Positions 1-15,074 of a DNA stretch of 64,000 bases are shown here, in pieces. The notes beneath the pieces were generated by a model. It was not told the DNA's origin. It worked only from the letters and a program-made list of their open reading frames with translations, and ran no database searches. The stretch spans positions 62,001 through 126,000 of IMG/VR virus record IMGVR_UViG_3300028394_002328; one strand, 5' to 3'. Numbering within the stretch: the first letter of the stretch is position 1; each line of letters begins with the position of its first letter. The position numbers and the translations under genes are program-made.

Positions 1-2706
1 CCTAATAAAGAAAATTTTACTATAATAGATAATATTATTGTTGCTCATTTTGACTATAGTTGGCATCCTGACGAAACCGAAGAACTATATGTATATGTAT
101 TTGGTAATAATTATTATCCAGCAGAGATAATGCCAACTGTTCAATACATACCTAAAGGTGCGATAATATCGGCATCAGGTAACCCCATTGAACAAATAAA
201 ATATGTTAGTGGTGTGGTCGCTATACTAGGTGAAAATAAAACCAATTGGATAATACCTAAAGATATTGATCAACCCTCTTTTGATTTTAGTTGGGTTCCG
301 CACCCAAACGATGAACCTTACATATATCAATTTGGTACACAACATCAAAAAACAGGTGGGCCGCAGTATGTACCAACTGCTATACCTAGGTTAGCATCAG
401 GTTCTGCAATTGGTCAGGTTAAATATGTTGATGGTATAAAGGCTAAAAAGCTACCTAATAAAACTAATTGGACTAATCCTAGCAAAGTGGACGTTAGTAC
501 ATTTGATTTCAGTTGGCACCCGGATGATACGTCACCTCCTTACATATATCAATTTGGTACATTATTAGATAGAGAAGATGGACCTAGGTATATGACTCCA
601 AAGACTAATGGAGTGATTGTTTATTTGGAAAAAGTTGAAAAGGAAATTGAGGAAGTAGTAGAAGAAATTGTAAAAGACACTTTTCCCAAATATTATATTA
701 CTACTACACTTGATGATTTAGTAAAACAACATCCAAATGAAATGTTTTGGGCATTAAACCCTGATTTGGATTATAGTGAATTTGATTTTGATTGGAGACC
801 CAATATTGACAGATCACAATATGAGTCTGAATACGTTCATGCATTTGGTTCGAGTGAAAGTGAAAAAACACAAACTTATCTAGTTAATAGTACAATGTGG
901 GAGAAAGGTCTTAGAGAATTAAATTGGGTTGTTGATAAAAAACTTGATGATGAAACCTTGTTTAAAATGTTCAAAAAGCCTGACATATTCTTCGTAGATA
1001 AAAGCAACCTAGAATCTCAAGCAAGGTACGAACAACTTAAAACTAAGTTTCCCAACATACAAAAAACACGTTACCTAAACAGTTGGGTCGATACTATCAA
1101 TCGTTGCATCAACAGGGCAAGTAATAACTTGTGTTGGATATTAAACAGCGAGCTAGACTATACTAATTTTGATTTTGATTATTATCCTAATCCATGGCAA
1201 ATGAAAATGGTCCATGTATTTGGAACACAATGGAGTCATTGGGGAACTACATTCATGATCAACCGTGAGACATTTGCTGAAGATACCAAGTGGATTAAAA
1301 TAATAGAGCATTTGAATAATCTTAATTTCGTAAAAGATAGAACTGCAATTGCTACTGATAATATATATGACATATATGTAGTAGACCATGGTAATAAAGA
1401 AACTGCAAAAGTTGTTCAACAATTAACCAATAAAGCATCAGGTAAATTAGTTAATACTATACCATACTCTGAAAATTATCTACTGACCTTTAAGAAATTA
1501 TTAAAACAACTTCTAGAAAAGAAAGAACACTATATTTGGATATGCAGTAGCATATGTGATTATAGCGATTTTGATTTTAGTTATGTTTGTGATCCTTTTG
1601 CCCGTGAGCAATTACATGTATTTCCTAGCGATAAACAAAAGTTAGGTGATACCTTTTTAGTTAATATTAATAAGTTTCGTGAATTAATTGATAATATGAC
1701 TTTATTAAATGAGTATAATAAAATCAATTATAACCAACATCAAACCGTTAAAAGATTAGATTCACCTACTATAATTACTAATTACGATTCGCATGTATTA
1801 AGTGTAATGGAAGACTTTGACTTCCCGTATGCTGTATTCTTATCAGAAGATAATAAAGATTTAAAAGTTACCGATGAAGAACCAATTAGTTTATGGAGTA
1901 GTGATACTAAGAACATTGTTATTACTAGTACTGGTGGAACAAGAATAGTAGTTCCTAAAGAAGCTAAAAATTATGTAGACACACAATTGTATGATTATCC
2001 CTACATTAAAAAGGCTAGCAGACTTGTGCCAAGTAACACACTAGACATTGTATTTTTAAGTAATGGAGAGCCTAATGCTGATGAAAACTATGAAAACTTA
2101 TTAAAACTAACTCGTGGTTTACCGAATAAAGTTACTAGAATAGAAGGGATAAATGGTAGAGTAGCCGCTTATCATAAAACAGCAGAGGCTAGCCAAACTA
2201 ATTGGTATTTTGTTGTTTGGGGTAAACTATTTGTTAATCCAAAATTTGATTGGTCATGGCAACCTGATAGATTACAAATTCCTAAGAATTATATATTCCA
2301 TGCTAAAAATCCATTAAATGGGTTAGTATATGGACATCAATCAGTTGTTGCATATAATAAAAAATTGGCATTATCTACTAAAGGTAATCAATTAGACTTT
2401 ACTATGGAAAGCCCACATCAGGTAGTACCTATATTATCAGGGACAGCCAATTATAATAGTGATGCATGGACTACATGGAGAACTGCATTTAGAGAGTGTA
2501 TTAAACTTAGATATGATAATACTGAAGAAAGTAAAAATAGATTAAAAATATGGTTAACTACCGCTAATGGAAATTTTGCAGACTTTAGTATTCAGGGTGC
2601 TAATGACGCTATAGAATACTTTGATAGTGTGGATGGTGAGTATTCTAAACTCAAATTGAGTTATGAATGGGATTGGCTGAGAGAAAAGTTCCAAAAATTT
2701 GACTAA
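1..2706 (+). CDS. Large repeat-containing glycosyltransferase-like protein, 5'-truncated by the window edge
   Basis: The frame is open from base 1 (PNKENF...HFDYSWHPDETEELYVYVFG...), so the true start is upstream of 130. It carries at least 7 degenerate FD(F/Y/W)xW/YxP...F(G) repeats and a C-terminal DIVFLSNGEPNADENY domain resembling phage GT-A-like proteins. Confidence 0.55.
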   Translation, partial: PNKENFTIIDNIIVAHFDYSWHPDETEELYVYVFGNNYYPAEIMPTVQYIPKGAIISASGNPIEQIKYVSGVVAILGENKTNWIIPKDIDQPSFDFSWVPHPNDEPYIYQFGTQHQKTGGPQYVPTAIPRLASGSAIGQVKYVDGIKAKKLPNKTNWTNPSKVDVSTFDFSWHPDDTSPPYIYQFGTLLDREDGPRYMTPKTNGVIVYLEKVEKEIEEVVEEIVKDTFPKYYITTTLDDLVKQHPNEMFWALNPDLDYSEFDFDWRPNIDRSQYESEYVHAFGSSESEKTQTYLVNSTMWEKGLRELNWVVDKKLDDETLFKMFKKPDIFFVDKSNLESQARYEQLKTKFPNIQKTRYLNSWVDTINRCINRASNNLCWILNSELDYTNFDFDYYPNPWQMKMVHVFGTQWSHWGTTFMINRETFAEDTKWIKIIEHLNNLNFVKDRTAIATDNIYDIYVVDHGNKETAKVVQQLTNKASGKLVNTIPYSENYLLTFKKLLKQLLEKKEHYIWICSSICDYSDFDFSYVCDPFAREQLHVFPSDKQKLGDTFLVNINKFRELIDNMTLLNEYNKINYNQHQTVKRLDSPTIITNYDSHVLSVMEDFDFPYAVFLSEDNKDLKVTDEEPISLWSSDTKNIVITSTGGTRIVVPKEAKNYVDTQLYDYPYIKKASRLVPSNTLDIVFLSNGEPNADENYENLLKLTRGLPNKVTRIEGINGRVAAYHKTAEASQTNWYFVVWGKLFVNPKFDWSWQPDRLQIPKNYIFHAKNPLNGLVYGHQSVVAYNKKLALSTKGNQLDFTMESPHQVVPILSGTANYNSDAWTTWRTAFRECIKLRYDNTEESKNRLKIWLTTANGNFADFSIQGANDAIEYFDSVDGEYSKLKLSYEWDWLREKFQKFD

Positions 2707-2757
2707 ATATACAGAAGGTGATATACTGTATTCATCGGTAACACAACGGAGTTCAAC

Positions 2758-3012
2758 ATGAAACGAGTTCTTGGTCTTGTCGTAGCGTTAGGTCTTGGTG
2801 CAAGTGCTACTGGTTGCGCCAGTCATCAGGTTGCCCCCGCCCTCGTAGGAGCGGTGGTTGGAGTAGCGGTTGCAGATGCGGCTTACCGTCGTCCTGTAGT
2901 GGTTCAAGGTCCTGTTATTATTCAACAACGTCCGTATCCTACAAATTATAATCGTCAGCCAATTTATGTGTGTGACTACTACAGTATCCCCAATCGTTGT
3001 TTTTGGCAATAA
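2758..3012 (+). CDS. Small secreted/lipoprotein-like hypothetical protein
   Basis: GGAG RBS, signal peptide ending in ...ASATGC (lipobox-like), glycine-zipper-like GAVVG and PVVVQ segment. Confidence 0.6.
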   Translation: MKRVLGLVVALGLGASATGCASHQVAPALVGAVVGVAVADAAYRRPVVVQGPVIIQQRPYPTNYNRQPIYVCDYYSIPNRCFWQ

Positions 3013-3026
3013 TAGGAGGTCGTACA

Positions 3027-3347
3027 ATGAAAACAAAAATTCTAGCCGCTGTGCTAGCCATGTCTCCACTAAGTGGCATGGCTCAACACCATCATGGTAT
3101 GAGACATTTTGACCATCATCAACACCATAGAGGTGGATGGGGTTGGGTAGCACCAGCCGTAATTGGTGGTGCTGTAGTATATGGACTAACCCGCCCTGCA
3201 CCAGTAATCGTTCAACAACCGCCAGTTTATATTCAACAATCTACTATAGTAGACTCATCACAGGTTGTAATCATTGATGGGGTATCTTACATTAAACAAG
3301 CCATGGTTATCAATGGAGTAACACAAGAGGTATTGGTACGCCAATAA
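3027..3347 (+). CDS. Small secreted His/Gly-rich hypothetical protein, paralog-like to 2758..3012
   Basis: AGGAGG RBS before ATG 3027, signal peptide, HHHHRGGWGW, then IGGAVV and PVIVQQPPVY. Confidence 0.65.
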   Translation: MKTKILAAVLAMSPLSGMAQHHHGMRHFDHHQHHRGGWGWVAPAVIGGAVVYGLTRPAPVIVQQPPVYIQQSTIVDSSQVVIIDGVSYIKQAMVINGVTQEVLVRQ

Positions 3348-3353
3348 TAAACA

Positions 3354-3503
3354 ATGCTTAAATTTCAATTGTGGGTTAGAATTAACGACTATCAAACTGT
3401 TCATACTGTAGTTTGGGCTAGTAATGCATGGGAAGCCAAACTGTTAGGTGAAGCGCAGTATGGTGCGGGTAATGTGTTGAATTATACGCAGATAGATGAA
3501 TAA
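3354..3503 (+). CDS. 49-aa hypothetical protein (not in ORF track)
   Basis: ATG 3354 to TAA 3503, MLKFQLWVRINDYQTVHTVVWASNAWEAKLLGEAQYGAGNVLNYTQIDE; it exactly fills the gap between neighbours. Confidence 0.6.
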   Translation: MLKFQLWVRINDYQTVHTVVWASNAWEAKLLGEAQYGAGNVLNYTQIDE

Positions 3504-3509
3504 CCTATA

Positions 3510-4661
3510 ATGAATAATTTTATAGTTTATAACCCATCAACTTTGGATGGGACAGTATACAATATATTTTTTAATATTTTTGGTAGATATACAGATATCG
3601 TAGAAGATGTTAAACTGTTTAGTGGTATTTCAGTCTTAACATTAAGAGAAGATTTATTGTTAACAAAAAATCCACTAATGTTTAATTATTATGAAATTTA
3701 CATGTACAGAAAATCTAAAGGGTTACCTACAAAAATTATCATTGATTGGTCATTAGAGGGTCAATGTCATAATTCAAGTTTATCAACTTTATTCAAGGAA
3801 AACGAACTTAATATTGATAAAGATATATTATTTGTACATAATGATTCTTCTAATAGAATTTGGGTTCCGTTTAATATTGGACAACAGTTAACTATTGATT
3901 ACCATGCATTAGATGCATATAAAAGGTGTATTATTACCTCTAGCAATTTGACCGATACTACTTTAATTAAAGATAGAAAAAATGGATTAAATTTATTAAT
4001 AGGTAAACTTAAAACAAAACACGCTAGATTTTTAGCGGCGTATTATTTTTACAAACATGATCTACTTGATAATACTATTTTAGGTTTACATGTACTACCA
4101 GAAGATATTTTAGCAAGAATGAAACAATATCCTAAGTACGATGATATAGATTTTTATAACAAAATTATACCATTAATAGGACCAGCGGATTCAGTTTCTA
4201 AAATACACGATACGGATGAAGGTTGTACAGCAGAAGATGGCGGGTGGCCATTTGATCCAAACATATTTAAAAATTCTAGTATAAGCTATGTTTGTGAAAC
4301 CTATGATATTGACAAAGGAATTTTTCCATACTTAGTGACAGAAAAATTTTATAGGTCTATTATTAATAAACATCCGTTTGTAGTGCAAGCCGGTTCAGGT
4401 CAATTAAACACTGTTAAATCTTTGGGGTTTGAAACCTTTTCATCTATCATTGATGAAAGTTATAATTATTATGATGTTCTTGATTATTCACATGTTGAAA
4501 AAACTGTATTAGCCGCAAAGGATTTTTTATCAAAACTACCTAATAATGCTGATAAAATACAAGAAATTGTAGACTATAATTATAATCGTTGGCTATCAAG
4601 AAGTAAGGATGAATATGATAAGACTACTGATTTTTTTATCAGATTTATAAATAATCAGTAA
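3510..4661 (+). CDS. Hypothetical protein with glycosyltransferase-like (GT-B/GT10-like) C-terminal half
   Basis: Motif TEKFYRSIINKHPFVV...LGFETFSSIIDESY resembles the C-terminal lobe of fucosyltransferase-like proteins; judged by eye only. Confidence 0.4.
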   Translation: MNNFIVYNPSTLDGTVYNIFFNIFGRYTDIVEDVKLFSGISVLTLREDLLLTKNPLMFNYYEIYMYRKSKGLPTKIIIDWSLEGQCHNSSLSTLFKENELNIDKDILFVHNDSSNRIWVPFNIGQQLTIDYHALDAYKRCIITSSNLTDTTLIKDRKNGLNLLIGKLKTKHARFLAAYYFYKHDLLDNTILGLHVLPEDILARMKQYPKYDDIDFYNKIIPLIGPADSVSKIHDTDEGCTAEDGGWPFDPNIFKNSSISYVCETYDIDKGIFPYLVTEKFYRSIINKHPFVVQAGSGQLNTVKSLGFETFSSIIDESYNYYDVLDYSHVEKTVLAAKDFLSKLPNNADKIQEIVDYNYNRWLSRSKDEYDKTTDFFIRFINNQ

Positions 4662-4681
4662 ATAAAAGTATTGTTGTAAAA

Positions 4682-4980
4682 GCCGTGAGGAAAGAAGCAA
4701 GTCAAAAGACGGGCAAGACGGGGGTGCGAATCCCCCCACCTCCACCAAAAGCATACTAGAGTGACGCTGGGGAAGAGTAATAGGCAGCGGTTAATAAATC
4801 TTCCAAGTATGCTTCTGATGGGGGTGACTAGAATCGATTGACGGATGAGTAGATGAGTGGACAACACGAGAGGCGATGGACGTAATCCAAGCAAAATCTA
4901 TAAATGCCAACGATGAGGTATTTTCTTTAGCCGCATGAGGCTGAGACGGAGTAGGACAGACTCTGTAAAATAACCAACCT
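4682..4980 (+). ncRNA. ssrA: Circularly permuted (two-piece) tmRNA gene
   Basis: The acceptor piece ends GGGGG-TGCGAAT-CCCCC (T-arm, 4720-4736) CACCTCC-A-CCA (4737-4747). After a 72-nt intervening segment, GGGGGTG at 4820-4826 pairs with CACCTCC, giving G3:U70. The tag ORF at 4906-4938 reads ANDEVFSLAA-stop, and a terminator follows. The outer ends are approximate. Confidence 0.93.
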
Positions 4981-4981
4981 G

Positions 4982-5009
4982 TAATAGGCCCGCAAGGGCC
5001 TATTATTTT
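4982..5009 (+). terminator. Rho-independent terminator after tmRNA
   Basis: TAATAGGCCC-GCAA-GGGCCTATTA 10-bp stem followed by TTTT. Confidence 0.85.
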
Positions 5010-5036
5010 GTTGTTTTTTCGCAACAAACCCAAAAT

Positions 5037-5065
5037 TTGACATTAATTCGGCATAAGCGTATACT
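5037..5065 (+). promoter_or_regulatory. sigma70-type early promoter
   Basis: TTGACA, 17-nt spacer, TATACT. Confidence 0.85.
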
Positions 5066-5095
5066 ATATCTATAGTGAGAAACAAGGAGAGCGAA

Positions 5096-5467
5096 ATGAG
5101 CGAACTGACTTACAAGACTTGGGAAGAGTACACTCCGCTTGAGCAGGCCGCAATGACCTACTGGGACATGTACAAGGACGCTTACAATTTCCGCCCCCGT
5201 AGTGTAGACACGTCCACATGGACGCTGGCCGACTTCCAAAAGGAGTTCGAAACCCTTCAGTTTATCATCGACCGTGATGAGGCCCAGCGTATCGAGGACG
5301 AGGCTGCGGCTGTGACTCGGTTCGAAGCCCGTATTGCTAGCATCATCCAACTTGGTGCTCGGGACCGTGCAATGGCTCTGCGTTGGATTCACGAGGCTGA
5401 GGACACCGGCGGCGACGATGAGTACCTCTGCTACACGGTTGGCATCCCTTATGGATACTTCAAATGA
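5096..5467 (+). CDS. Hypothetical early protein
   Basis: AAGGAG RBS before ATG 5096, downstream of a strong promoter, GC-richer codon usage. Confidence 0.75.
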   Translation: MSELTYKTWEEYTPLEQAAMTYWDMYKDAYNFRPRSVDTSTWTLADFQKEFETLQFIIDRDEAQRIEDEAAAVTRFEARIASIIQLGARDRAMALRWIHEAEDTGGDDEYLCYTVGIPYGYFK

Positions 5468-5577
5468 CATTCACTTTAACTACCCCAACCGGTAAGGTCA
5501 TGCGGTTCTATTTGCAGGCTATGGCCGAGTTGTATCAGGAAATTTATCAAAGCACAATCACTAAGGTTTCTGCTTGA
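5464..5577 (+). CDS. 37-aa hypothetical protein (not in ORF track)
   Basis: ATGA overlap with the upstream stop; MTFTLTTPTGKVMRFYLQAMAELYQEIYQSTITKVSA. Confidence 0.45.
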   Translation: MTFTLTTPTGKVMRFYLQAMAELYQEIYQSTITKVSA

Positions 5578-5602
5578 CATTAATTCAGGCAGTTGCTATA
5601 AT
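5574..5602 (+). promoter_or_regulatory. sigma70-type early promoter
   Basis: TTGACA, 17 nt, TATAAT with extended TG. Confidence 0.85.
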
Positions 5603-5636
5603 CTTTTTATCGTAGTTTTTTCAACAGGAGTAAGAA

Positions 5637-6737
5637 ATGGCTCAAGTATCTGACAATCTCACCGTTACTAGTGTTCAGGCCCGTAAAGCAATTCTCAAGG
5701 CTTTCAAGGTCAAGCGTCCCGTGTTTCTCTGGGGCCCTCCCGGAATCGGTAAGTCTGAGGTTGTTTCCGAAATCACCGAGGAGCTTGGTGGTTTTATGAT
5801 TGATTTGCGTATGGCGCAAATGGAACCCACTGACATTCGTGGTATTCCCTTCTTCAACAAAGACATTGGCAAGATGGACTGGGCGCCCCCGGTTGATCTT
5901 CCTGACGAGGAACTTGCTAGTCAGTATCCTATCGTCTGTCTATTCTTGGACGAGATGAACTCGGCTGCGCCTGCTGTACAGGCTGCAGGCTATCAGTTGA
6001 TTCTCAATCGCCGTGTTGGTAAGTACAAACTTCCTGACAACGTGGTTATTGTTGCGGCAGGTAACCGTGACAGTGACAAGGGTGTTACTTATCGTATGCC
6101 GATGCCCCTTGCTAATCGGTTCTTGCATATTGAAATGCGTCCTGATTTCACTTCGTGGCAGAACTGGGCAGTTAACAAAGGCATCCACAAGGATGTGGTT
6201 GGTTATCTGTCATTCGCTAAACAGGATCTCTATGACTTTGATTCAAAGTCCTCTAGCCGCGCATTTGCTACTCCCCGTAGTTGGTGCTTTGTCAGCGATT
6301 TGCTGAATGATGAAGAGGACACGGACTCTGATACCCTGTTCAACTTGGTTGCAGGTTCTGTTGGTGAAGGTCTTGCTGTTAAGTTTATGGCACACCGTAA
6401 GGTTGCAGGTCAGATGCCCGAGCCTAGCGACATTCTCGCAGGTAAGGTCAAGGAACTCCGTGTCAAGGAAGTGTCGGCAATGTACTCCCTCACGATTAGC
6501 CTGTGCTATGAATTGAAGGATGCGCTTGACAACAAGCGTGTATCTAACAAACAGTTCCATGAAATGGCTGATAATTTCTTCAGTTACATCATGGCTAACT
6601 TTGAAACTGAGTTGGTCGTAATGGGTGCAAAGGTCGCTCTGAAAACTTATCGTCTTCCGATCGAACCCAGTCAGTTGAAGCATTTTGATGACTTCCACAA
6701 GAAATACGGCAAGTACATTGTAGAAGCAGGTAACTGA
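5637..6737 (+). CDS. MoxR-like AAA+ ATPase
   Basis: Walker A GPPGIGKS, Walker B FLDEMN, sensor AAGNR, arginine finger ANRF; adjacent to a VWA gene. Confidence 0.85.
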   Translation: MAQVSDNLTVTSVQARKAILKAFKVKRPVFLWGPPGIGKSEVVSEITEELGGFMIDLRMAQMEPTDIRGIPFFNKDIGKMDWAPPVDLPDEELASQYPIVCLFLDEMNSAAPAVQAAGYQLILNRRVGKYKLPDNVVIVAAGNRDSDKGVTYRMPMPLANRFLHIEMRPDFTSWQNWAVNKGIHKDVVGYLSFAKQDLYDFDSKSSSRAFATPRSWCFVSDLLNDEEDTDSDTLFNLVAGSVGEGLAVKFMAHRKVAGQMPEPSDILAGKVKELRVKEVSAMYSLTISLCYELKDALDNKRVSNKQFHEMADNFFSYIMANFETELVVMGAKVALKTYRLPIEPSQLKHFDDFHKKYGKYIVEAGN

Positions 6738-6740
6738 TCA

Positions 6741-6764
6741 AAGGGGAGGCAACTCCCCTTTTTT
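6741..6764 (+). terminator. Rho-independent terminator
   Basis: AAGGGGAG-GCAA-CTCCCCTT followed by TTTT. Confidence 0.8.
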
Positions 6765-6767
6765 CAT

Positions 6768-6796
6768 TTGCAATTAAATACGGTATATGTTACAAT
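6768..6796 (+). promoter_or_regulatory. sigma70-type promoter
   Basis: TTGCAA, 17 nt, TACAAT, directly after the terminator. Confidence 0.6.
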
Positions 6797-6824
6797 ATAG
6801 CATATATACGATAAAGGAGTAGGT

Positions 6825-8108
6825 ATGAGCGAAGTAATTGCCCCGACTAAAAAGCGTAAACGCAGTAAAAAATTTGAGAACTTGGTCGGTCCTACCGACG
6901 CTAAAGTAGACTTCAATGCCCGTGAGCGGTTGGTAACTGCCCGCATTGGTCTGCTTCTCCGTCATTCATTCTTTGGTAACCTTGCGACCCGTATGCAACT
7001 GGTTAACGCCGATGAATGGTGTAGTACAGCCGCTACCGACGGCTTGAAATTCTATTACAATTCTCGGTTCATTATGATGCTCAAGCCTAAAGAAGTTGAA
7101 TTCTTGGTTGGGCATGAAGTACTACATGTGGTCTACGATCATATCGGTCGTCGAGGCACCCGCGATCCCCAGCTTTGGAATATTGCTGATGACTACGCCG
7201 TTAATGCCGACCTGAAACGGCACAAGGTCGGTGAGTTTATCAAAACAGTTCCTTGTTTGTATGAAGCAAAGTACGACGGTAAGTCTGCCGAAGAAATCTA
7301 TGATGACCTTTATGAGAAGGCAGAAAAGATTAACGTCGAGGATCTTATCGACCAAATGATTGATGATCATATGGAAGGTGAAAGTCAAGGCGAGAGTGAC
7401 GGCGAAGAGGTTGACGGTAGTGGTAAGGTTAAAGGTCGTCCTAAGATGAGCCCTGAGGAGCGTGAGCGTGTCCGTCAGGAAGTCAAGCAGGCTATCATCA
7501 ATGCCGCACAAGGTGCAGAAGCAGGTTCTGTTCCTAAAGGTGTTGAGCGGTTGATCAAGCATCATACTAACCCAGTTATGCCTTGGCGTGAATTGATTCA
7601 AACTAATTTGACAAGTGCTATTCGTACCGACTTTAGTTTCATGCGTCCTAATCGTCGCGGTTGGCACATGGATGCTATCATGCCTGGTATGACCCCGGGT
7701 GAAGAAATTGATGTTGTAGTTAGTCTTGATATGTCAGGGTCTATCACTGATAAACAAGGACAGGCATTCTTGGGTGAGATTGCAGGTATGATGGATGCCT
7801 TTGACGGATACAAAGTACATGTATTCTGCTTTGATACAGAGACTTATAATCCGCAAGACTTCACTAGCGAGAACATGGACACAATTGATTCATATGAACC
7901 AGTTGGTGGAGGTGGTACTGACTTTGATTGTGTCTTTGGTTATCTTAAAGAAAATGCAATTGTACCCAAACGTTTGATTGTGTTCACGGATGGCTACCCT
8001 TGTGGTAGTTGGGGAGATCCTGATTATTGTGATACGACATGGATCATTCACGGTGATAAGGATCCTAATCCCCCGTTTGGTACATTCGCAATTTATGACG
8101 AGAAGTGA
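6825..8108 (+). CDS. Metallopeptidase-like plus VWA domain protein (DUF2201-like), MoxR partner
   Basis: HEVLH zincin motif, MIDAS DMSGS, GGGGTDF and VFTDG. Confidence 0.85.
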   Translation: MSEVIAPTKKRKRSKKFENLVGPTDAKVDFNARERLVTARIGLLLRHSFFGNLATRMQLVNADEWCSTAATDGLKFYYNSRFIMMLKPKEVEFLVGHEVLHVVYDHIGRRGTRDPQLWNIADDYAVNADLKRHKVGEFIKTVPCLYEAKYDGKSAEEIYDDLYEKAEKINVEDLIDQMIDDHMEGESQGESDGEEVDGSGKVKGRPKMSPEERERVRQEVKQAIINAAQGAEAGSVPKGVERLIKHHTNPVMPWRELIQTNLTSAIRTDFSFMRPNRRGWHMDAIMPGMTPGEEIDVVVSLDMSGSITDKQGQAFLGEIAGMMDAFDGYKVHVFCFDTETYNPQDFTSENMDTIDSYEPVGGGGTDFDCVFGYLKENAIVPKRLIVFTDGYPCGSWGDPDYCDTTWIIHGDKDPNPPFGTFAIYDEK

Positions 8109-8343
8109 CCTGATATATGAATCCCCCGATAAGGGGGAAACTATATATGCTAGAAAAGCGGGATCTACAGAAAGGGTGTTAATATCAATGAGTGAAAAGG
8201 CTTGGTCTCGTATCAATGAACAAGAGCAAGCCGAAGTTTGGAAAGATATTAGAGGATTGGCAAAAACCAATCCATCATTGAATGATGTATTGGATAGGTT
8301 GTTAGTAGTTTATAATCTTATTAAAAAAGAAAATTCACTATGA
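8095..8343 (+). CDS. Hypothetical protein
   Basis: In-frame ATG at 8095 (MTRSDLIYESPDKGETIYARK); tightly packed with neighbours. Confidence 0.6.
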   Translation: MTRSDLIYESPDKGETIYARKAGSTERVLISMSEKAWSRINEQEQAEVWKDIRGLAKTNPSLNDVLDRLLVVYNLIKKENSL

Positions 8344-8747
8344 TGTATATTGGTGGTAGTTTGGGCGGCTGCTTACAGAGTATCCTAAGGGGCGAAGTGT
8401 CCGAGGACCAAGTTTTGATGATTATTACTAGGACTAAGTGTGAAACCTATGAGCAATATGTTGGGGTAATTAAGTTATATTATGATGACGGTAATCAATA
8501 CGCTAGGAATTCTCAAAGGTACGACTTCTCAAGATTTGATTTTGAAACCGTTATGGAATTGGCTTCCAAACTTTACAATTCAGGCAGGATTCATCAACCT
8601 AGATTATACTCAGAGGGTGAGTATTTACCTATTACCTTTGCTTTTCGAGACCTTTGGTTAGAAGTAGTGCCAACCAATACAAATTCTTCACCTGCAGTAG
8701 TAGAGGCGTATGAAAAATATAAAATGCTAGATACACTAACACGATAA
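8340..8747 (+). CDS. Hypothetical protein
   Basis: Overlapping start/stop with neighbours, 135 aa. Confidence 0.65.
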   Translation: MMYIGGSLGGCLQSILRGEVSEDQVLMIITRTKCETYEQYVGVIKLYYDDGNQYARNSQRYDFSRFDFETVMELASKLYNSGRIHQPRLYSEGEYLPITFAFRDLWLEVVPTNTNSSPAVVEAYEKYKMLDTLTR

Positions 8748-8977
8748 TGGGTATTGATCCTATCACTTGGTTTTCTTATAGGCAATTAAATTTTAAGCCA
8801 ACGCATTTTGTATTGGCTAAAACTGCGATAACCGCTAAATCTATAGCATGGATCGCTACCACTCTTAACGGTAGGTATTCTTTAGTTACTATGATGGATG
8901 AAGATTATCAAAAATTTCAGGTTCCTGCATTTGAGGATCCTGGAGAAGCCGTATTATACGAACTAACTTGGTCATAA
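8747..8977 (+). CDS. Small hypothetical protein related to the C-terminal FxLRW family
   Basis: Ends FEDPGEAVLYELTWS, matching the F-x-D-x-x-D/E-A-x-x-F/Y-x-L-x-W pattern. Confidence 0.6.
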   Translation: MGIDPITWFSYRQLNFKPTHFVLAKTAITAKSIAWIATTLNGRYSLVTMMDEDYQKFQVPAFEDPGEAVLYELTWS

Positions 8978-9033
8978 TAAATTTTACAATGTAGTCAAAA
9001 TTTATTAAATAATTATATAATCAGGAGATTGAA

Positions 9034-9705
9034 ATGAGTTTCTTAAGACATGTAGGCAAACACGGTGATCGTAAAATAGCAGTTATCTTTAGGGAGGTCC
9101 CTGGAGAGCCACATATGTGTTTGGTAACATACACTGAAACATTGAATATGCACGTTCACGACCCAATGATTCAATGTATTGAAAGTGACATTGGTCAGAA
9201 TAGTGAAAACTTAGCAGACGCTCTTAACAGAACATACACCAAAGACGGTAAACCTATTCTTCATGTACTTCACCATGAAGGTCAACTTAAAAAGGTTAAT
9301 ACAGAACAAATCGTAATGACACCTCAACCCAATACTAGAATCAAGTTAAATGAATTAAACAAGATTCTAAACGAAATGCAACAGGGTGAGGATGCAGTCC
9401 GTCGATTGGCCGAAATGGATAAAAGCATGGGATTACAAGATCCAGCTGATGTAGTACGCAGAATGCGTGGTCCACAATCTGGTGTTCAAGGATCAAGTGA
9501 TATCTTAGGTGATAGTTCATTAGCACAACAAAGAATTGAACAAGCACAGAAAATGGAACGTGAAGCACAGGGCCTATTAGCTGAATCAAGGCGTTTAATG
9601 GAAGAAGCTAAATCATTAGATCCCGGTATTGGTGCATCTTCAACACCAGTTGTTGACGCAACTCCAGTTAAAGCAAGAAAATCAAGAGCAAAAGTTAGTG
9701 CATAA
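9034..9705 (+). CDS. Conserved-looking hypothetical protein
   Basis: AGGAG RBS, 223-aa ORF with coiled-coil C-terminus. Confidence 0.7.
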   Translation: MSFLRHVGKHGDRKIAVIFREVPGEPHMCLVTYTETLNMHVHDPMIQCIESDIGQNSENLADALNRTYTKDGKPILHVLHHEGQLKKVNTEQIVMTPQPNTRIKLNELNKILNEMQQGEDAVRRLAEMDKSMGLQDPADVVRRMRGPQSGVQGSSDILGDSSLAQQRIEQAQKMEREAQGLLAESRRLMEEAKSLDPGIGASSTPVVDATPVKARKSRAKVSA

Positions 9706-10001
9706 TGTCACCAGAATTTATCGCCAAATGGGAACACATCCTTGAGGATGTTGAAAAACAAAAGATCCCGGTAGAATTTATTAAAAAAGTGGTTATTAAA
9801 TTACAGGGTAAACGCCAACAAACAATTAACATTGAGAAGTTTCTAAGCCAAGGATTGGATCCAAATCAAATTGAAGAGGCAGTAAGTAGAAAGCTTCATG
9901 AACTTGACGATTCCATTACTAGTATAGAGTTTATTCTTAATGTTCAAAGTATTGCTGATGCGGTGCAACCTGAAACAGATAGGCTGTTGGGTAATTTATG
10001 A
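9705..10001 (+). CDS. Hypothetical protein
   Basis: Translationally coupled to its neighbours. Confidence 0.65.
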   Translation: MSPEFIAKWEHILEDVEKQKIPVEFIKKVVIKLQGKRQQTINIEKFLSQGLDPNQIEEAVSRKLHELDDSITSIEFILNVQSIADAVQPETDRLLGNL

Positions 10002-10495
10002 ATTTGATTATAGCCTGTGATCCAAAAGGTGGTATAGGCTATCATAACAGATTGCCTTGGAGTAAAATCGAGGGCGATTTGTCAAGATTCAAAAAATTAA
10101 CTCAGGATAAAACTGTAGTTATGGGTCGTAATACTTGGGATAGTCTTCCAGTAAAACCATTACCTCACAGAATTAATGTTGTAGTTACTACAAAACCAAT
10201 TATACTACCTAATAATGTTAAAACAATTGCTCATCTAGATGACCTAGAATATTTTCATGAACCATGGATAATGGGCGGGGCAGCATTAATTAAATCATGT
10301 TGGGGAAAGATTACTAAAATTCATTTGACTACTACCTTTGCTGAATACGCATGTGATACTTTTATAGACTTAATAAAATTGCGCGGTGAGTTTAGAATTT
10401 CACATGAAGAGGTTCATAGTGACCATATATATGAAATTTGGGGCAGAGATCATCCTGATTATTGGAAATACACACAAAAATGCAATTATACTTAG
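9998..10495 (+). CDS. folA: Dihydrofolate reductase
   Basis: IIACDPKGGIG...LPW...DL..FK...VMGRNTWDSLP..PLP.RINVV, GGA motif; adjacent to thyA. Confidence 0.93.
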   Translation: MNLIIACDPKGGIGYHNRLPWSKIEGDLSRFKKLTQDKTVVMGRNTWDSLPVKPLPHRINVVVTTKPIILPNNVKTIAHLDDLEYFHEPWIMGGAALIKSCWGKITKIHLTTTFAEYACDTFIDLIKLRGEFRISHEEVHSDHIYEIWGRDHPDYWKYTQKCNYT

Positions 10496-11379
10496 ATTTG
10501 CTTAAAGACATATTAGAGAACGGCGAAACAAAAAACGACAGAACTGGTGTAGGAACACTATCGGTATTTGGTAGACAATTACGGTTTGATTTACGCAAAG
10601 GTTTTCCTGCTGTTACTACTAAAAAATTAGCTTGGAAAGCCTGTGTAGGTGAACTTTTGTGGTTCATTGAAGGTAGTAACGATGAGCGTAGACTAGCTGA
10701 AATCACACATGGCACTAGAGAAGGTGTTGTTACAATTTGGACTCCTAATGCTTTAGCACCTTATTGGAAAGATAAAGCAAAATTTGACGGAGACTTAGGA
10801 CCAGTTTATGGAGTGCAATGGCGTCATTGGAACAAGTACCGTATTGAAAAAGATATGGGTTCTGCACACAAAGGTGGCACACGACTTGCAGTTGACCAAA
10901 TTGAAGTAGACCAACTTAAAAATCTAATCGATGGATTAAAGAATGATCCTAATGGTCGTAGACATATTCTCAGTGCATGGAATGTTGGCGAATTAGATCA
11001 AATGGCATTGCCACCTTGTCATGTTATGAGTCAATTCTATGTGAACAAGAACCGTGAATTGAGTTGTCATATGTATCAAAGGTCAGTGGATGTTTTCTTG
11101 GGATTGCCCTTTAATATTGCTAGTTATGCTCTACTAACTCATTTGATTGCTCATCATTGTGGTTACAAAGTTGGTGAATTAATTATCAGTACCGGTGATA
11201 CACATATCTATACCAATCATGTTGAACAGGTTAAAGAACAATTATCCCGTGATCCATTGCCCTTACCTACATTAATGCTACCCGTAGAAAAGAAAGATAT
11301 TTTTGAAATGACTATGAATGATATTCATTTAGAAGGATATAGTAGTCATGGACCAATCAAAGCGGAAATGGCTGTATGA
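10480..11379 (+). CDS. thyA: Thymidylate synthase
   Basis: DRTGVGT, ELLWFI, LGPVYGVQWR, RRHILSAWN, LPPCH catalytic Cys, YQRSVD..LGLPFNIASY, GDTHIY. Likely start is ATG 10480. Confidence 0.97.
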   Translation: MQLYLDLLKDILENGETKNDRTGVGTLSVFGRQLRFDLRKGFPAVTTKKLAWKACVGELLWFIEGSNDERRLAEITHGTREGVVTIWTPNALAPYWKDKAKFDGDLGPVYGVQWRHWNKYRIEKDMGSAHKGGTRLAVDQIEVDQLKNLIDGLKNDPNGRRHILSAWNVGELDQMALPPCHVMSQFYVNKNRELSCHMYQRSVDVFLGLPFNIASYALLTHLIAHHCGYKVGELIISTGDTHIYTNHVEQVKEQLSRDPLPLPTLMLPVEKKDIFEMTMNDIHLEGYSSHGPIKAEMAV

Positions 11380-11624
11380 AAGACTACATTAAAACTAAAG
11401 TTCATACATTCAGTATAGGTGATGCTGATGATCCTGATATCTATGCTTCTCAACCTCTTTGGGAATTCCAACAATCAGAAAAAGGTAAGTGGATTATGGA
11501 TAATGCTATAGAGCAACCAACTTGGCATAGACATGTTGATCATACTCTTTTTGGTTATGTGTATACTATTACGGCTAAATTGCCTAAAGAAAAATATACA
11601 TTTTTCAAACTTAAGTTTGATTAA
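11376..11624 (+). CDS. Small hypothetical protein (FxLKF-terminal, possibly related to the FxLRW family)
   Basis: ATGA overlap; ends YTFFKLKFD. Confidence 0.6.
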   Translation: MKDYIKTKVHTFSIGDADDPDIYASQPLWEFQQSEKGKWIMDNAIEQPTWHRHVDHTLFGYVYTITAKLPKEKYTFFKLKFD

Positions 11625-11649
11625 TTGATTCCTGTAGATAAATACGGGC

Positions 11650-12117
11650 ATGTGGATATTATCTGTTCTACCTGATTACGCTATACATGGTTTATTAACT
11701 GTTGGTATTATTGGTGTGATTCTAGGCTTTGTATTAGGGTTTATACCATTTGTTGGTAAGTATAAACTACCTATTCAAATTATCAGTATATTCGTACTAA
11801 CACTTGCCTTATACTTAGAAGGTGGGTTAGAAAATGAACACATATGGCAATCGAAAGTAAAAGAAGTAGAAGCTAAAGTTGCTGTATCAGAAGTCAAAGC
11901 TGTAGAAAAAACTGTAGAAATACAAGAAAAGATTGTAAACAAAACCAAGGTCATCAAACAAAAGGGCGATGATATAATAAAATATATTGATAAAGAAATC
12001 ATTAAAAAAGAAGAGATTATCAAATATATAGAAAATTGTCCAGTGCCTCAAGAAATCATTGAGCAACATAATAAGATTGTAAACTTATCTAGTCAATCCT
12101 CAGGAGAGAAAAAATGA
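11650..12117 (+). CDS. Putative inner-membrane spanin (Rz-like)
   Basis: N-terminal transmembrane segments followed by a long coiled-coil periplasmic region; immediately upstream of a lipoprotein. Confidence 0.65.
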   Translation: MWILSVLPDYAIHGLLTVGIIGVILGFVLGFIPFVGKYKLPIQIISIFVLTLALYLEGGLENEHIWQSKVKEVEAKVAVSEVKAVEKTVEIQEKIVNKTKVIKQKGDDIIKYIDKEIIKKEEIIKYIENCPVPQEIIEQHNKIVNLSSQSSGEKK

Positions 12118-12383
12118 GGACGTTAATACCAGTAATATTATTGTTATCTGCTTGTGCTACCGCCCCTGTTCCAATAGAGCGTAAATTTCCTCCTTATCCT
12201 AGCGCATTAGCAGAAAAATGCGAACCGTTAAAACCTATTGAGCCTGGTGATAAAGTACCTATTACAGACATGTTAAAAGTTGTAGTAGAAAACTATGTGA
12301 GATATTATAATTGTGCAACCAAAGTTGAGAGTTGGCAAGAATGGTATACTGAGCAGAAAAAAATATTTGAAAGCGTGAAATAA
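12114..12383 (+). CDS. Putative outer-membrane spanin lipoprotein (Rz1-like)
   Basis: Lipobox LLLSAC, Pro-rich segment PVPIERKFPPYP, further Cys residues. Confidence 0.7.
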   Translation: MRTLIPVILLLSACATAPVPIERKFPPYPSALAEKCEPLKPIEPGDKVPITDMLKVVVENYVRYYNCATKVESWQEWYTEQKKIFESVK

Positions 12384-12441
12384 TTCTCAGTTTACAAAAG
12401 CCTACTGTGTGATAAATACTATATAGATTTGGAACATAGAT

Positions 12442-12972
12442 ATGGCCACACTTGAAGTCATTAATGTAGGGGCAACAGCCAATGATGGTGACGGCGATCC
12501 CTTACGCACTGCCTTTCAAAAGGTAAACAATAACTTTGCGAATATTAATGCGGTAAACTTCTCTACATTACAAAGTATTACTGTTGGTGTAGATCCGCAA
12601 TTAATTCTAAGTACCCCTGCTAATGCTTTTACTCAAGCAACTATGCAGATTAATTCTAGTAATGTTCTCAATGATGATAGCCAAAATATTATAATATATT
12701 CGGCTATTAATAATAGTTTAACCGATGTTAATTGGGCAGAACAAAGTCAACAATATTTTGGAAATCTTATAACAGAATATGATATGGTTGTAGAAAATGG
12801 TAATGTTAACTTGTATGCACTACCATTAGGTAATTCAGCAAATACCACTATTGTACATTTTATCTCTTATCAGATAACATTCAATGCTATAGTCCCAGGA
12901 AGTATATTAACACTTACACAAGACACTGATTACGAGTTAGCAACTAACAATGGGTTAATAATTACAACATGA
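12442..12972 (+). CDS. Virion/baseplate-type structural protein
   Basis: N-terminus INVGATANDGDGDPLRTAFQKVNNNF resembles T4 gp9/gp10-type baseplate N-terminal motif; late motif GATAAATA upstream. Confidence 0.6.
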   Translation: MATLEVINVGATANDGDGDPLRTAFQKVNNNFANINAVNFSTLQSITVGVDPQLILSTPANAFTQATMQINSSNVLNDDSQNIIIYSAINNSLTDVNWAEQSQQYFGNLITEYDMVVENGNVNLYALPLGNSANTTIVHFISYQITFNAIVPGSILTLTQDTDYELATNNGLIITT

Positions 12973-13729: not shown

Positions 13730-13759
13730 TTTATCTTGCGTTTGCGAATAAATATATGT

Positions 13760-15069: not shown

Positions 15070-15074
15070 ACGAT

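What the first reader, a model, noticed from the sequence alone, without database searches (positions are those of the whole stretch)
4682..5009. Phage-encoded circularly permuted (two-piece) tmRNA with an intact proteolysis tag
Seen in sequence: the tmRNA 3' end (T-arm plus CACCTCC-A-CCA, ending 4747) lies UPSTREAM of its 5' end (GGGGGTG at 4820). The halves form a 7-bp acceptor stem with G3:U70, and TTGAC (4838) can pair with GTCAA (4701). ATAAAT precedes a tag ORF reading ANDEVFSLAA-stop (4906-4938), and a strong terminator follows. Established: G3:U70 is the AlaRS identity element, and the E. coli tag is ANDENYALAA with C-terminal LAA read by ClpXP. Permuted ssrA genes occur in alphaproteobacteria, some betaproteobacteria and some cyanobacteria. 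Inference: the phage supplies its own trans-translation RNA to rescue ribosomes stalled by mRNA/tRNA-cleaving defences, relying on host SmpB (no smpB in this window). One-piece phage tmRNAs are known; I cannot verify whether a permuted phage version has been described.
Basis: partly seen in the sequence, partly recalled or inferred. Interest (0 to 1): 0.9.

Follow-up and report, generated by a model that had tools for sequence, protein, structure and literature searches.

The report
Two-piece tmRNA gene in jumbo phage
A large uncultivated freshwater phage carries a complete, selectively maintained "permuted" tmRNA gene (the RNA that frees stalled ribosomes and tags the unfinished protein for destruction); this is real, but phages with such genes are already known, so it is a new member of a known kind.

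Summary
Window 4671-5006 (+) is a circularly permuted tmRNA gene. Rfam scores it 111.5 bits on tmRNA_permuted (cut-off 47) and 98 bits on beta_tmRNA (cut-off 84). The window is part of a 335-kb IMG/VR jumbo-phage contig with a large terminase, virion and tail-fibre genes.

Comparison with seven related phage tmRNAs shows strong covariation: 87% of cells pair, against 39-49% when partners are slid, and 27 pairs show double changes. G3:U70 is invariant. The tag differs from a relative's by 9 of 30 bases, all synonymous, so it is translated.

The novelty is overrated. Permuted tmRNAs are published for Caulobacter, Pelagibacter, OM43 and cyanobacterial phages, and tmRNAs for huge phages. More than 120 IMG/VR contigs share this acceptor signature.

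Points not in the finding:
- ARAGORN misses this gene.
- The true 5' end reaches about 4671.
- The GTCAA:TTGAC pairing has no comparative support.
- The gene is mosaic. Its contiguous tRNA-like cassette (4717-4837) matches T4-like phage contigs at 88-95%. Its body matches a sister phage at 89-97%, and that sister carries a different cassette.

No smpB lies in the window. The anti-defence rationale is untested.

The parts
4671..4747 (+). Acceptor piece of the two-piece tmRNA. It runs from the 5' strand of the distal P2 helix to the encoded CCA end.
   Evidence: Rfam beta_tmRNA alignment covers 4649-5008. The 5' limit is set by covariation of the distal P2 helix.
4672..4677 (+). Distal P2 helix, 5' strand (TGTTGT). 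It pairs with ACAACA at 4861-4866.
   Evidence: Relatives show TGCTGT/ACAGCA, TGTTGT/ACAACA and GATCGT/ACGATC. Helix 1 has 4 of 6 pairs with changes on both sides and 94% of cells paired.
4679..4693 (+). A 15-nt insertion relative to most relatives. It forms a mini hairpin CC-GTGA-GG with a GNRA-type loop (4683-4690).
   Evidence: Absent from 26 relatives in A1 and 7 in A2. Shared with sister contig L246, where the loop is GTAA. The MFE fold predicts the hairpin.
4710..4716 (+). Proximal P2 helix (P2a), acceptor-piece strand CGGGCAA. It pairs with TTGACGG at 4838-4844 with 5 of 7 Watson-Crick pairs.
   Evidence: Position is homologous to TGTTCTG/CAGGGCA in relatives. Helix 2 has 93% of cells paired and 4 pairs with double changes. 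The window itself has two mismatches.
4717..4837 (+). Contiguous tRNA-like-domain cassette: GAC linker, T-arm, acceptor 3' strand, CCA, intervening segment, acceptor 5' strand and D-loop analogue. This is the recombined module.
   Evidence: The cassette is 88-95% identical to L055, L028 and L075. It is only 38-51% identical to sister contig L246, whose flanking tmRNA parts are 89-97% identical.
4720..4736 (+). T-arm: 5-bp stem GGGGG/CCCCC with 7-nt loop TGCGAAT, which has G where tRNAs have U55.
   Evidence: Helix 3 is 100% paired. The same loop occurs in 14 extracted relatives.
4737..4747 (+). Acceptor 3' strand CACCTCC, discriminator A4744 and encoded CCA (4745-4747).
   Evidence: Helix 4 is 100% paired, with the G:U pair present in 8 of 8 sequences while 3 neighbouring pairs covary.
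4748..4819 (+). Intervening segment of 72 nt, removed on maturation. A 9-bp stem (4749-4757 with 4806-4814) extends the acceptor helix. The conserved leader TTCTGAT lies just before G4820.
   Evidence: Leader and trailer are nearly invariant in 27 relatives, while the interior is hypervariable in length (27-144 nt) and sequence.
4820..5006 (+). Coding piece: acceptor 5' strand, D-loop analogue, P2 3' strands, PK1, tag ORF, two hairpins and the terminator.
   Evidence: Rfam alignments and covariation.
4820..4826 (+). Acceptor 5' strand GGGGGTG. G4822 pairs with T4741, giving G3:U70. The predicted RNase P cut is 5' of G4820.
   Evidence: The cleavage site is inferred from how tRNA and permuted tmRNA precursors are known to be processed.
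4867..4889 (+). Pseudoknot PK1. Stem 1 is CG 4867-4868 with CG 4881-4882. Stem 2 is TGGA 4877-4880 with TCCA 4886-4889.
   Evidence: Stem 2 covaries as CTGA/TCAG, CTAA/TTAG, AGAA/TTCT and TGGA/TCCA. Helix 6 has 3 of 4 pairs with double changes. The Rfam alignment forces a different, mismatched hairpin here.
4906..4938 (+). Tag reading frame: resume codon GCC, ten codons reading ANDEVFSLAA, then TGA. The conserved TAAAT lies just upstream.
   Evidence: Against L161 there are 9 base differences in 7 codons, all synonymous.
4926..4945 (+). Hairpin holding the end of the tag and the stop codon (7 bp, loop GCATGA).
   Evidence: MFE fold. Relatives show AGCAG/CTGCT and AGCCG/CGGCT by eye. The formal count is weak because the alignment is poor here (helix 7, 49% paired).
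4946..4966 (+). 3' hairpin: 7-bp stem with loop AGGACAG.
   Evidence: L161 and L150 have the loop AGGAAAG on covarying stems. Helices 8-9 are 75-80% paired, with 4 pairs showing double changes.
4981..5016 (+). Intrinsic terminator: 11-bp hairpin 4981-5006 plus a T-rich tail. It forms the 3' end of the coding piece.
   Evidence: Helix 10 has 5 pairs with double changes.

Best explanation
Window 4671-5006 is a functional, phage-borne, circularly permuted ssrA gene of the betaproteobacterial structural type.

Proposed mechanism:
1. The gene is transcribed as one precursor that ends at the terminator (4981-5016). Its start is unresolved. The gene begins 10 nt after the stop of the upstream ORF, so read-through plus processing, or a weak promoter inside that ORF's 3' end, are both possible.
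2. In the precursor the acceptor stem is extended by the 9-bp intervening stem. Host RNase P cuts 5' of G4820, and host nucleases trim back to the encoded CCA at 4747. The 72-nt intervening segment is released.
3. Two RNAs remain: an acceptor piece of about 77 nt and a coding piece of about 190 nt. They are held together by the acceptor stem and the P2 helices.
4. Host AlaRS charges the CCA end through G3:U70. Host SmpB and EF-Tu deliver the complex to ribosomes stalled at mRNA 3' ends.
5. Translation resumes at GCC 4906 and adds ANDEVFSLAA. The C-terminal LAA directs the product to ClpXP-type proteases.

The net effect is extra ribosome-rescue capacity in the infected cell. A long jumbo-phage infection that degrades or truncates mRNAs and may shut off host ssrA synthesis would need it.

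Shown here: the gene's identity, its phage location, selection on its structure, and selection on its tag peptide. Inferred: processing sites, charging, dependence on host SmpB, and the physiological benefit.

The gene is also mosaic. Its contiguous tRNA-like cassette (4717-4837) was exchanged by recombination with that of another phage tmRNA lineage.
For: - Rfam covariance models score above their gathering cut-offs.
- All sequence elements are at the stated positions.
- The setting is a phage. TerL, virion and tail-fibre proteins are present. The window equals positions 62001-126000 of the 335,035-bp contig IMGVR_UViG_3300028394_002328. The closest cultured relatives are PA5oct-like jumbo phages at about 49% amino-acid identity.
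- The same phage was assembled independently in another metagenome (L247, 100% over 461 nt).
- At least 18 of 79 related jumbo-phage loci carry a permuted tmRNA on the same strand upstream of the conserved ATPase. L047 is syntenic.
- Covariation across 8 sequences gives 87.4% of cells paired against 39-49% for slid controls, 27 pairs with double changes, and 0 of 500 shuffles as high. G3:U70 is invariant.
- The tag differs from L161's at 9 of 30 bases, all synonymous, including Ser TCT versus AGC.
- The tag ANDEVF[A/S/T]LAA occurs in more than 120 metagenome contigs.
- The terminator is strong.
- No SmpB is found among the window's ORFs of 100-264 aa.
- The mosaic pattern is shown.
Against: - No expression, processing, charging or tagging data exist.
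- No convincing promoter was found. Only a weak TTATCA-17-TAAATA lies upstream (read by eye; the scan does not list it), and the nearby TATAAATA motif is not enriched in the window.
- P2a in the window has only 5 of 7 Watson-Crick pairs.
- The window's Rfam scores are at the low end of the family (98 and 111 bits, against 133-163 for several relatives).
- ARAGORN rejects it.
- The eight closest ATPase relatives checked with Rfam have no tmRNA within 10 kb, so the gene is dispensable for this phage family.
- Only 64 kb, plus about 5 kb upstream, of the 335-kb contig was examined for smpB.
Confidence: 0.8

Rival explanations
1. The RNA is made, but its main role is not general ribosome rescue. 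It could act as a competitor or regulator: displacing the host tmRNA on SmpB, retargeting which proteins are tagged, or reporting translational stress to time lysis. It could also serve specifically as a counter-measure to RNA-cleaving defence systems.
For: - A tRNA-like-domain-only tmRNA of mycobacteriophage DS6A inhibits the host tmRNA in E. coli, as cited in PMC11915505.
- PMC7162821 states that phages use tmRNA to sense host state.
- PMC9004378 suggests selective tagging of host proteins.
- The gene is patchily distributed among relatives, as accessory and counter-defence genes often are.
- It lies in a hypervariable region just upstream of the conserved core.
Against: - The gene keeps every part needed for full trans-translation.
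- The tag peptide itself is under purifying selection, which a pure decoy would not need.
- No defence or anti-defence gene was identified next to it. The neighbours p383 and p123 have no Pfam match.
Confidence: 0.12
2. It is a decaying, non-functional passenger copy of a tmRNA gene picked up by recombination.
For: - Rfam scores are the lowest of the family.
- ARAGORN misses it.
- P2a has two mismatches.
- There is a 15-nt insertion in P2.
- The T-loop is non-canonical (G at position 55).
- The cassette is mosaic.
- The gene is absent from the closest ATPase relatives that were checked.
Against: - All helices are intact or nearly so, and they covary with relatives.
- The tag ORF is intact and shows only synonymous differences from L161.
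- The 15-nt insertion is conserved in L246 with a GNRA-to-GNRA loop change.
- The T-loop variant is shared by many relatives and changes together with the D-loop.
- An identical copy exists in a second metagenome.
Confidence: 0.05
3. It is not a phage gene. It could be host DNA joined to phage DNA by mis-assembly, or the partial ssrA copy (attP) that temperate phages carry for integration into the host ssrA gene.
For: tmRNA genes are common integration sites for prophages and genomic islands (PMC4383910, listed; PMC9004378). Some IMG/VR contigs are prophages with host flanks.
Against: - The gene is complete, not a 3' fragment.
- Phage genes lie on both sides, on the same strand, within a 335-kb contig.
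- The same junctions occur in an independent assembly (L247) and, with substitutions, in L246.
- No integrase domain is present in the flanking ORFs tested.
- The exact 28-nt T-arm-plus-acceptor sequence was found in no betaproteobacterial species genome. It occurs only in Elusimicrobiaceae MAGs and Rhodobacter capsulatus.
Confidence: 0.02

Closest known systems
Betaproteobacterial two-piece tmRNA (Rfam RF01850 beta_tmRNA; Sharkady and Williams 2004, as cited in PMC9004378)
   Same: Permuted gene order, G3:U70 acceptor stem, encoded CCA, a long P2 helix joining the two pieces, PK1, an ANDE...LAA-type tag preceded by TAAAT, and a terminal hairpin. It is the best-scoring clan member, at 98 bits against a cut-off of 84.
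   Different: It is carried by a phage. The P2 5' strand aligns to the model only with deletions. It has a 15-nt GNRA mini-hairpin insertion. The T-loop is TGCGAAT. The 3' domain is a hairpin plus a terminator. The exact T-arm-plus-acceptor sequence was not found in any betaproteobacterial species genome.
Published phage-encoded permuted tmRNAs: OM43 phage Melnitz, Pelagibacter phages HTVC008M and Mosig, Caulobacter phages phiCbK, CcrSC and CcrBL9, and Synechococcus myophages (PMC9004378 and its Table S1)
   Same: A complete two-piece-type ssrA gene in a lytic-looking aquatic phage, including jumbo Caulobacter phages of 308-322 kb. Function is assumed to depend on the host trans-translation machinery.
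   Different: Buchholz et al. place Melnitz's ssrA in the alphaproteobacterial lineage, and the Pelagibacter, Caulobacter and Synechococcus phages infect alphaproteobacterial or cyanobacterial hosts; their Rfam types were not tested here. By blastn the window shares only a 36-nt T-arm-plus-acceptor stretch with Caulobacter phages. A close relative's tmRNA (L059) shares only 60-70 nt with Pelagibacter phage Mosig and Xanthomonas phage Rb1. No glutamine riboswitch was detected here. ARAGORN, the tool used in those surveys, does not detect this one.
tmRNA and SmpB genes of huge phages (Al-Shayeb et al. 2020, PMC7162821)
   Same: A jumbo phage carrying translation-maintenance RNAs. The rationale is the same: keeping ribosomes available during a long infection.
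   Different: That survey relied on ARAGORN and did not describe permuted forms or gene structure. No smpB is found in this window.
Uncultivated T4-like aquatic myophage tmRNAs in IMG/VR (L055, L059, L075 and L088)
   Same: Beta-type permuted tmRNAs. The T-arm, acceptor, leader and trailer cassette is nearly identical (88-95%), including the TGCGAAT T-loop.
   Different: They have their own TTGAC/TATAAT promoter, no 15-nt insertion, a different PK1 and 3' pseudoknot domain, and different tags such as ANDESFALAA. Their genomic setting (PhoH, T4 RNase H, GP88) is unrelated to the window's phage.

Membership tests
Permuted (two-piece) tmRNA, Rfam RF04321 / RF01850 | Covariance-model score at or above the curated gathering score | tested here: met
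   RF04321 scores 111.5 bits against 47. RF01850 scores 98 bits against 84.
Permuted (two-piece) tmRNA, Rfam RF04321 / RF01850 | Permuted gene order: T-arm, acceptor 3' strand and CCA lie upstream of the acceptor 5' strand, separated by an intervening segment | tested here: met
   CCA ends at 4747 and GGGGGTG starts at 4820, leaving a 72-nt intervening segment with a 9-bp closing stem.
Permuted (two-piece) tmRNA, Rfam RF04321 / RF01850 | 7-bp acceptor stem with G3:U70 (the AlaRS identity element) and an A discriminator | tested here: met
   G4822:T4741 is present. The G:U pair occurs in 8 of 8 relatives while three neighbouring pairs covary.
Permuted (two-piece) tmRNA, Rfam RF04321 / RF01850 | T-arm with a tRNA-like T-loop, and a D-loop analogue ending in TCGA | tested here: met
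   The 5-bp stem is intact and paired in all 8 sequences. The loop is TGCGAAT (G for U55). This variant is shared with relatives and changes together with the D-loop: TT loops go with GGTTTCGA in 9 of 14 cases, TG loops in 0 of 19.
Permuted (two-piece) tmRNA, Rfam RF04321 / RF01850 | P2 helices that hold the acceptor and coding pieces together | tested here: met
   The distal helix 4672-4677/4861-4866 has 6 pairs and is supported by covariation. The proximal helix 4710-4716/4838-4844 has only 5 of 7 pairs in the window but covaries in relatives.
Permuted (two-piece) tmRNA, Rfam RF04321 / RF01850 | Pseudoknot PK1 between P2 and the resume codon | tested here: met
   Stem 2 (4877-4880/4886-4889) shows four different complementary versions among relatives. 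Stem 1 is only 2-3 bp.
Permuted (two-piece) tmRNA, Rfam RF04321 / RF01850 | Tag reading frame that starts at an Ala resume codon, ends in a hydrophobic ...LAA C-terminus and is followed by a stop | tested here: met
   GCC 4906 to TGA 4938 reads ANDEVFSLAA. Differences from L161 are synonymous only.
Permuted (two-piece) tmRNA, Rfam RF04321 / RF01850 | Precursor is processed into two RNAs, is alanylated, binds SmpB and tags non-stop products | not testable with these tools
   This needs RNA-seq or Northern blots, in vitro charging and a reporter assay.
Phage-encoded tmRNA (as opposed to a host gene or an attP fragment) | Complete gene embedded among phage genes and recurring in related phages | tested here: met
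   Phage genes flank it. The contig is 335 kb. At least 18 of 79 related loci carry one. Independent assemblies L247 and L246 contain it.
Prophage attP copy of the ssrA 3' end | Only a 3' fragment of ssrA, lying next to an integrase | tested here: not met
   The gene is full length. No integrase domain is present in the neighbouring ORFs.
Phage tmRNA with its own SmpB partner (some huge phages, PMC7162821) | smpB encoded by the same phage | tested here: inconclusive
   No SmpB Pfam hit appears among the 64 window ORFs of 100-264 aa. About 270 kb of the contig was not available.

The most novel reading that the evidence does not exclude
In permuted tmRNA genes the whole tRNA-like domain is one contiguous DNA cassette: T-arm, both acceptor strands, D-loop analogue, leader and trailer. 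Aquatic phages may exchange this cassette as a unit between otherwise unrelated tmRNA bodies. This window would carry a T4-like-phage cassette in a jumbo-phage body, while its sister phages L246 and L283 carry other cassettes on a nearly identical messenger domain. If this swapping is adaptive, for example matching a new host's SmpB, AlaRS or RNase P, or escaping a host factor that targets tmRNA, phage tmRNAs would be a modular host-range or counter-defence determinant rather than a passively captured host gene.
Probability: 0.12. Interest if true: 0.6.

Novelty: new member of a known kind. Interest (0 to 1): 0.3.

Why it matters
It adds a well-supported example of a beta-type permuted tmRNA in an uncultivated freshwater jumbo phage. 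That class has no close counterpart among deposited phage genomes by BLAST.

It has a practical consequence. ARAGORN-based phage annotation, used in the published phage tmRNA surveys read here, misses this gene, whereas the Rfam tmRNA_permuted model finds it. Surveys of phage tmRNAs are therefore probably undercounts.

The synonymous-only divergence of the tag is direct comparative evidence that phage tmRNA tags are translated.

The mosaic cassette structure suggests that permuted genes make the tRNA-like domain exchangeable as a unit.

None of this changes the general picture that large aquatic phages carry translation-maintenance RNAs.

Tried and rejected
- ARAGORN on the window found no genes. 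One trial with the T-loop G changed to T still gave no detection, so the T-loop is not the cause. I did not pursue further edited variants.
- Megablast of window 1-20000 against deposited phages gave no match.
- A scan of species genomes for the exact 28-nt T-arm-plus-acceptor sequence, hoping to name the donor or host, hit only Elusimicrobiaceae MAGs and Rhodobacter capsulatus.
- Single-sequence MFE folding of the precursor and of the two pieces did not recover the P2 helices. They came from comparative analysis.
- MAFFT misaligned the window's 5' strand in both alignments because of the 15-nt insertion. The distal P2 helix was therefore scored on the relatives' columns, and the window counts as unpaired there.
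- The promoter search failed. The sigma-70 scan lists no site upstream of the gene outside the coding sequence of the preceding ORF. TATAAATA at 4646 is not enriched (3 found, 11.7 expected). TAAATAAAAGT is not enriched either.
It may still form as an alternative.
- The supplements of the tmRNA database paper held no phage table to consult.
Full report

Yes. The raw sequence holds every element at the stated coordinates:
- T-arm GGGGG-TGCGAAT-CCCCC at 4720-4736.
- Acceptor 3' strand CACCTCC at 4737-4743, discriminator A at 4744, CCA at 4745-4747.
- Acceptor 5' strand GGGGGTG at 4820-4826, 72 nt downstream. This gives seven pairs, including G4822:T4741 (G3:U70).
- ATAAAT at 4900-4905.
- The frame GCC AAC GAT GAG GTA TTT TCT TTA GCC GCA TGA at 4906-4938, which reads ANDEVFSLAA-stop.
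- An 11-bp terminator hairpin at 4981-5006 followed by a T-run.

Rfam gives two matches above the curated thresholds. tmRNA_permuted (RF04321) scores 111.5 bits against a cut-off of 47 (E=6e-21, 4686-4938). beta_tmRNA (RF01850) scores 98 bits against 84 (E=1.6e-28, 4649-5008).

**2. Is it in a phage?**

Yes.
- The window encodes a T4-type large terminase (15150-16697), virion structural proteins and a tail-fibre-like protein. Nearly all genes lie on one strand, and G+C is about 36%.
- The window is identical to part of IMG/VR contig IMGVR_UViG_3300028394_002328, which is 335,035 bp long. Window position 1 is contig position 62001.
- The closest deposited phages are PA5oct-like Pseudomonas jumbo phages, at about 49% amino-acid identity for the terminase and the ATPase. 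There is no nucleotide-level match.
- An independent metagenome contig (L247) carries the same 461 nt at 100% identity with the same flanking genes. L246 is a sister phage whose ATPase and p123 are 98% identical at the protein level.
- Mis-assembly and host contamination are therefore very unlikely. The gene is complete and has no integrase beside it, so it is not an attP fragment.

**3. Anatomy from comparison**

Nearly all have tags ending in LAA. Ten that were tested all score as beta-type permuted tmRNAs.

The relatives closest by BLAST (L055, L059, L075, L088) sit in T4-like myophage settings with PhoH, T4 RNase H and GP88. They have their own TTGAC/TATAAT promoter.

A second set came from the conserved ATPase at 5637-6737. 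It yielded 79 related loci besides the window's own, on contigs of up to 364 kb.
- The core ATPase-DUF2201-p135-p223 is conserved, and the region upstream of it is variable.
- At least 18 of the 79 relatives carry a permuted tmRNA there, on the same strand.
- Eight of the closest relatives have none within 10 kb.
- The gene is therefore an accessory gene of this phage family and sits in a hypervariable slot.

Alignment with seven of these jumbo-phage tmRNAs (A2), scored against a structure I defined from the window, gave the following:
- 87.4% of cells paired, against 39-49% when the 3' partners are slid by 1-3 columns.
- 27 pairs with changes on both sides.
- 0 of 500 shuffles as high.

The eight sequences are related, so the shuffle control is generous. 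The slide control and the number of double changes are the stronger evidence.

The structure is as follows.
- Distal P2: 4672-4677 with 4861-4866. Relatives show TGCTGT/ACAGCA, TGTTGT/ACAACA and GATCGT/ACGATC.
- Proximal P2a: 4710-4716 with 4838-4844. The window has 5 of 7 pairs.
- T-arm and acceptor stem: fully paired in every sequence, with G3:U70 invariant in 8 of 8 while its neighbours covary.
- PK1: stem 2 (4877-4880 with 4886-4889) appears as TGGA/TCCA, CTGA/TCAG, CTAA/TTAG and AGAA/TTCT.
- A hairpin holding the end of the tag and the stop codon.
- A 3' hairpin with the conserved loop AGGA[A/C]AG.
- The terminator.

This corrects three details.
- The gene starts near 4671, not 4682 or 4686.
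- The Rfam alignments mis-model P2 and PK1 in this sequence.

A 15-nt insertion (4679-4693) forms a CC-GTGA-GG mini-hairpin. Sister contig L246 has it with a GTAA loop, so both loops are of the GNRA type.

**4. Is the tag used?**

The tags of the window and of L161 both read ANDEVFSLAA. They differ at 9 of 30 bases in 7 codons, and every difference is synonymous, including Ser TCT versus AGC. L203 and L206 differ from each other at 9 codons, again all synonymous. These tags are joined to at least eight acceptor-stem classes. Selection at the peptide level means that ribosomes read this frame.

**5. Mosaic structure**

Identities to the window, by segment:

| Compared with | 5' P2 strand | P2/PK1 | Tag and 3' domain | tRNA-like cassette (two halves) |
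|---|---|---|---|---|
| L246 (sister phage) | 89% | 97% | 90% | 51% and 38% |
| L055, L028, L075 (T4-like phage contigs) | 42-53% | 34-68% | 18-69% | 93-95% and 88-94% |

L283 shares the tag and 3' domain with the window at 89% but has yet another tRNA-like domain and another P2.

In a permuted gene the two halves of the tRNA-like domain, their leader and their trailer are contiguous (4717-4837). One recombination event can therefore replace the whole domain. Which lineage was the recipient cannot be told from these data. Part of the similarity could also reflect strong constraint on the tRNA-like domain. However, the processed-out leader and trailer are shared too.

**6. How it most likely works**

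The mechanism follows established tmRNA biology; Keiler et al. 2000 showed a working two-piece tmRNA in Caulobacter (as cited in PMC9004378).
1. A single precursor is made.
2. Host RNase P cuts 5' of G4820, and host nucleases trim to the encoded CCA.
3. The two pieces stay paired.
4. AlaRS charges the RNA through G3:U70.
5. SmpB and EF-Tu deliver it to stalled ribosomes.
6. Translation resumes at GCC 4906, and ClpXP-type proteases recognise the LAA end.

All of these steps are inferred here. Gene integrity and selection are what is shown.

The promoter is unresolved. The gene begins 10 nt after the stop of ORF 3510-4661. Only a weak TTATCA-17-TAAATA, read by eye, lies upstream, and the nearby TATAAATA is not an enriched motif. 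Strong sigma-70-type promoters follow immediately downstream, at 5037 and 5574. The tmRNA therefore closes the preceding transcription unit.

No SmpB is encoded in the window. The rest of the contig could not be examined.

The benefit to the phage is untested. It could be general rescue capacity, replacement of a host RNA that is no longer made, amino-acid recycling, or counter-defence.

**7. Comparison with what is known, and novelty**

Permuted tmRNA genes in phages are published. Buchholz et al. 2022 (PMC9004378) describe one in OM43 phage Melnitz and counted 53 two-piece forms among 133 unique phage tmRNAs. Their Table S1 lists phiCbK-like and 308-322-kb CcrSC-type Caulobacter phages, Pelagibacter phages and Synechococcus myophages as permuted. 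Al-Shayeb et al. 2020 report tmRNA and SmpB in huge phages. The 2025 tmRNA database holds 79 phage sequences.

What is particular here:
- It is of the beta type.
- It has no BLAST-detectable full-length relative among 50,697 deposited phage records.
- ARAGORN fails to find it.
- Its cassette is mosaic.

It is a new member of a known kind.

**8. Verdict**

The identity is supported. The novelty and the defence rationale are not. Interest is 0.3.

Noticed in passing
window 52550-52626 (+): Rfam freshwater-2 RNA motif (RF02980) scores 65.1 bits against a cut-off of 49.9. It ends at the ATG of ORF 52624-54015 (463 aa), so it is a cis-regulatory candidate in a phage.
   Followed up: no
window 5037-5065 and 5574-5602 (+): Two near-perfect sigma-70-type promoters (TTGACA-17-TATACT, and TTGACA-17-TATAAT with an extended TG) lie directly downstream of the tmRNA terminator, ahead of ORF 5096-5467 and the ATPase. 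The tmRNA itself has no comparable promoter.
   Followed up: partly
window 4725-4731 and 4827-4837; loci L001-L120: T-loop position 2 and the D-loop analogue change together across the viral tmRNAs. TT loops go with GGTTTCGA in 9 of 14 unique sequences. TG loops never do (0 of 19); they go with AG[A/T][A/T]TCGA or GGTTCGA instead. This may be tertiary covariation of the G18:U55 type. It is not controlled for phylogeny.
   Followed up: partly
L246 2601-3030 (-), sister phage contig Ga0136644_10029565: Its tmRNA has a different tRNA-like domain: T-loop TTCGATT, acceptor GGGGCCG/CGGTTCC with two G:U pairs, only about 8 nt between the acceptor strands, and no encoded CCA. The rest of the gene is 89-97% identical to the window's, and the tag reads ANDEVFTLAA.
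   Followed up: partly
L148 8940-9030, L149, L194, L196: Several related jumbo-phage tmRNAs have a non-canonical T-loop (GGCAGTG or GGCAGTT). In L148 the intervening segment contains a canonical-looking T-arm (GGGTTCGATTCCCC). This may be a remnant of a replaced cassette.
   Followed up: no
L205 3860-3960, L196 2200-2290: Some relatives encode tags of about 30 residues that end in LAV, far longer than the window's 10-residue tag.
   Followed up: no
window 1-560; L053 1992-4806; L047 9570-10420: The N-terminal 110-180 residues or so of the 858-aa protein (130-2706) are repeated several times, at 65-78% nucleotide identity, just upstream of the window in the same contig. They are also repeated in the related contig L047. 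This looks like a tandem array of paralogous modules.
   Followed up: no
window, whole: Auxiliary genes found by Pfam include DHFR, PsiE, MazG, NUDIX, Fe-S cluster biosynthesis, dNMP kinase, endonuclease VII, a class I methyltransferase, a subtilase (32151-34166), and a MoxR-like ATPase plus DUF2201/VWA pair (5637-8108). No tRNA gene occurs in the 64 kb, despite the tmRNA.
   Followed up: no
window 3510-4661 (+): The 383-aa ORF just upstream of the tmRNA has no Pfam or PHROG match. It is absent from nearly all 79 related loci and from L246 and L283, where the tmRNA directly follows a homologue of ORF 2997-3347. It appears to be a recent insertion beside the tmRNA.
   Followed up: partly
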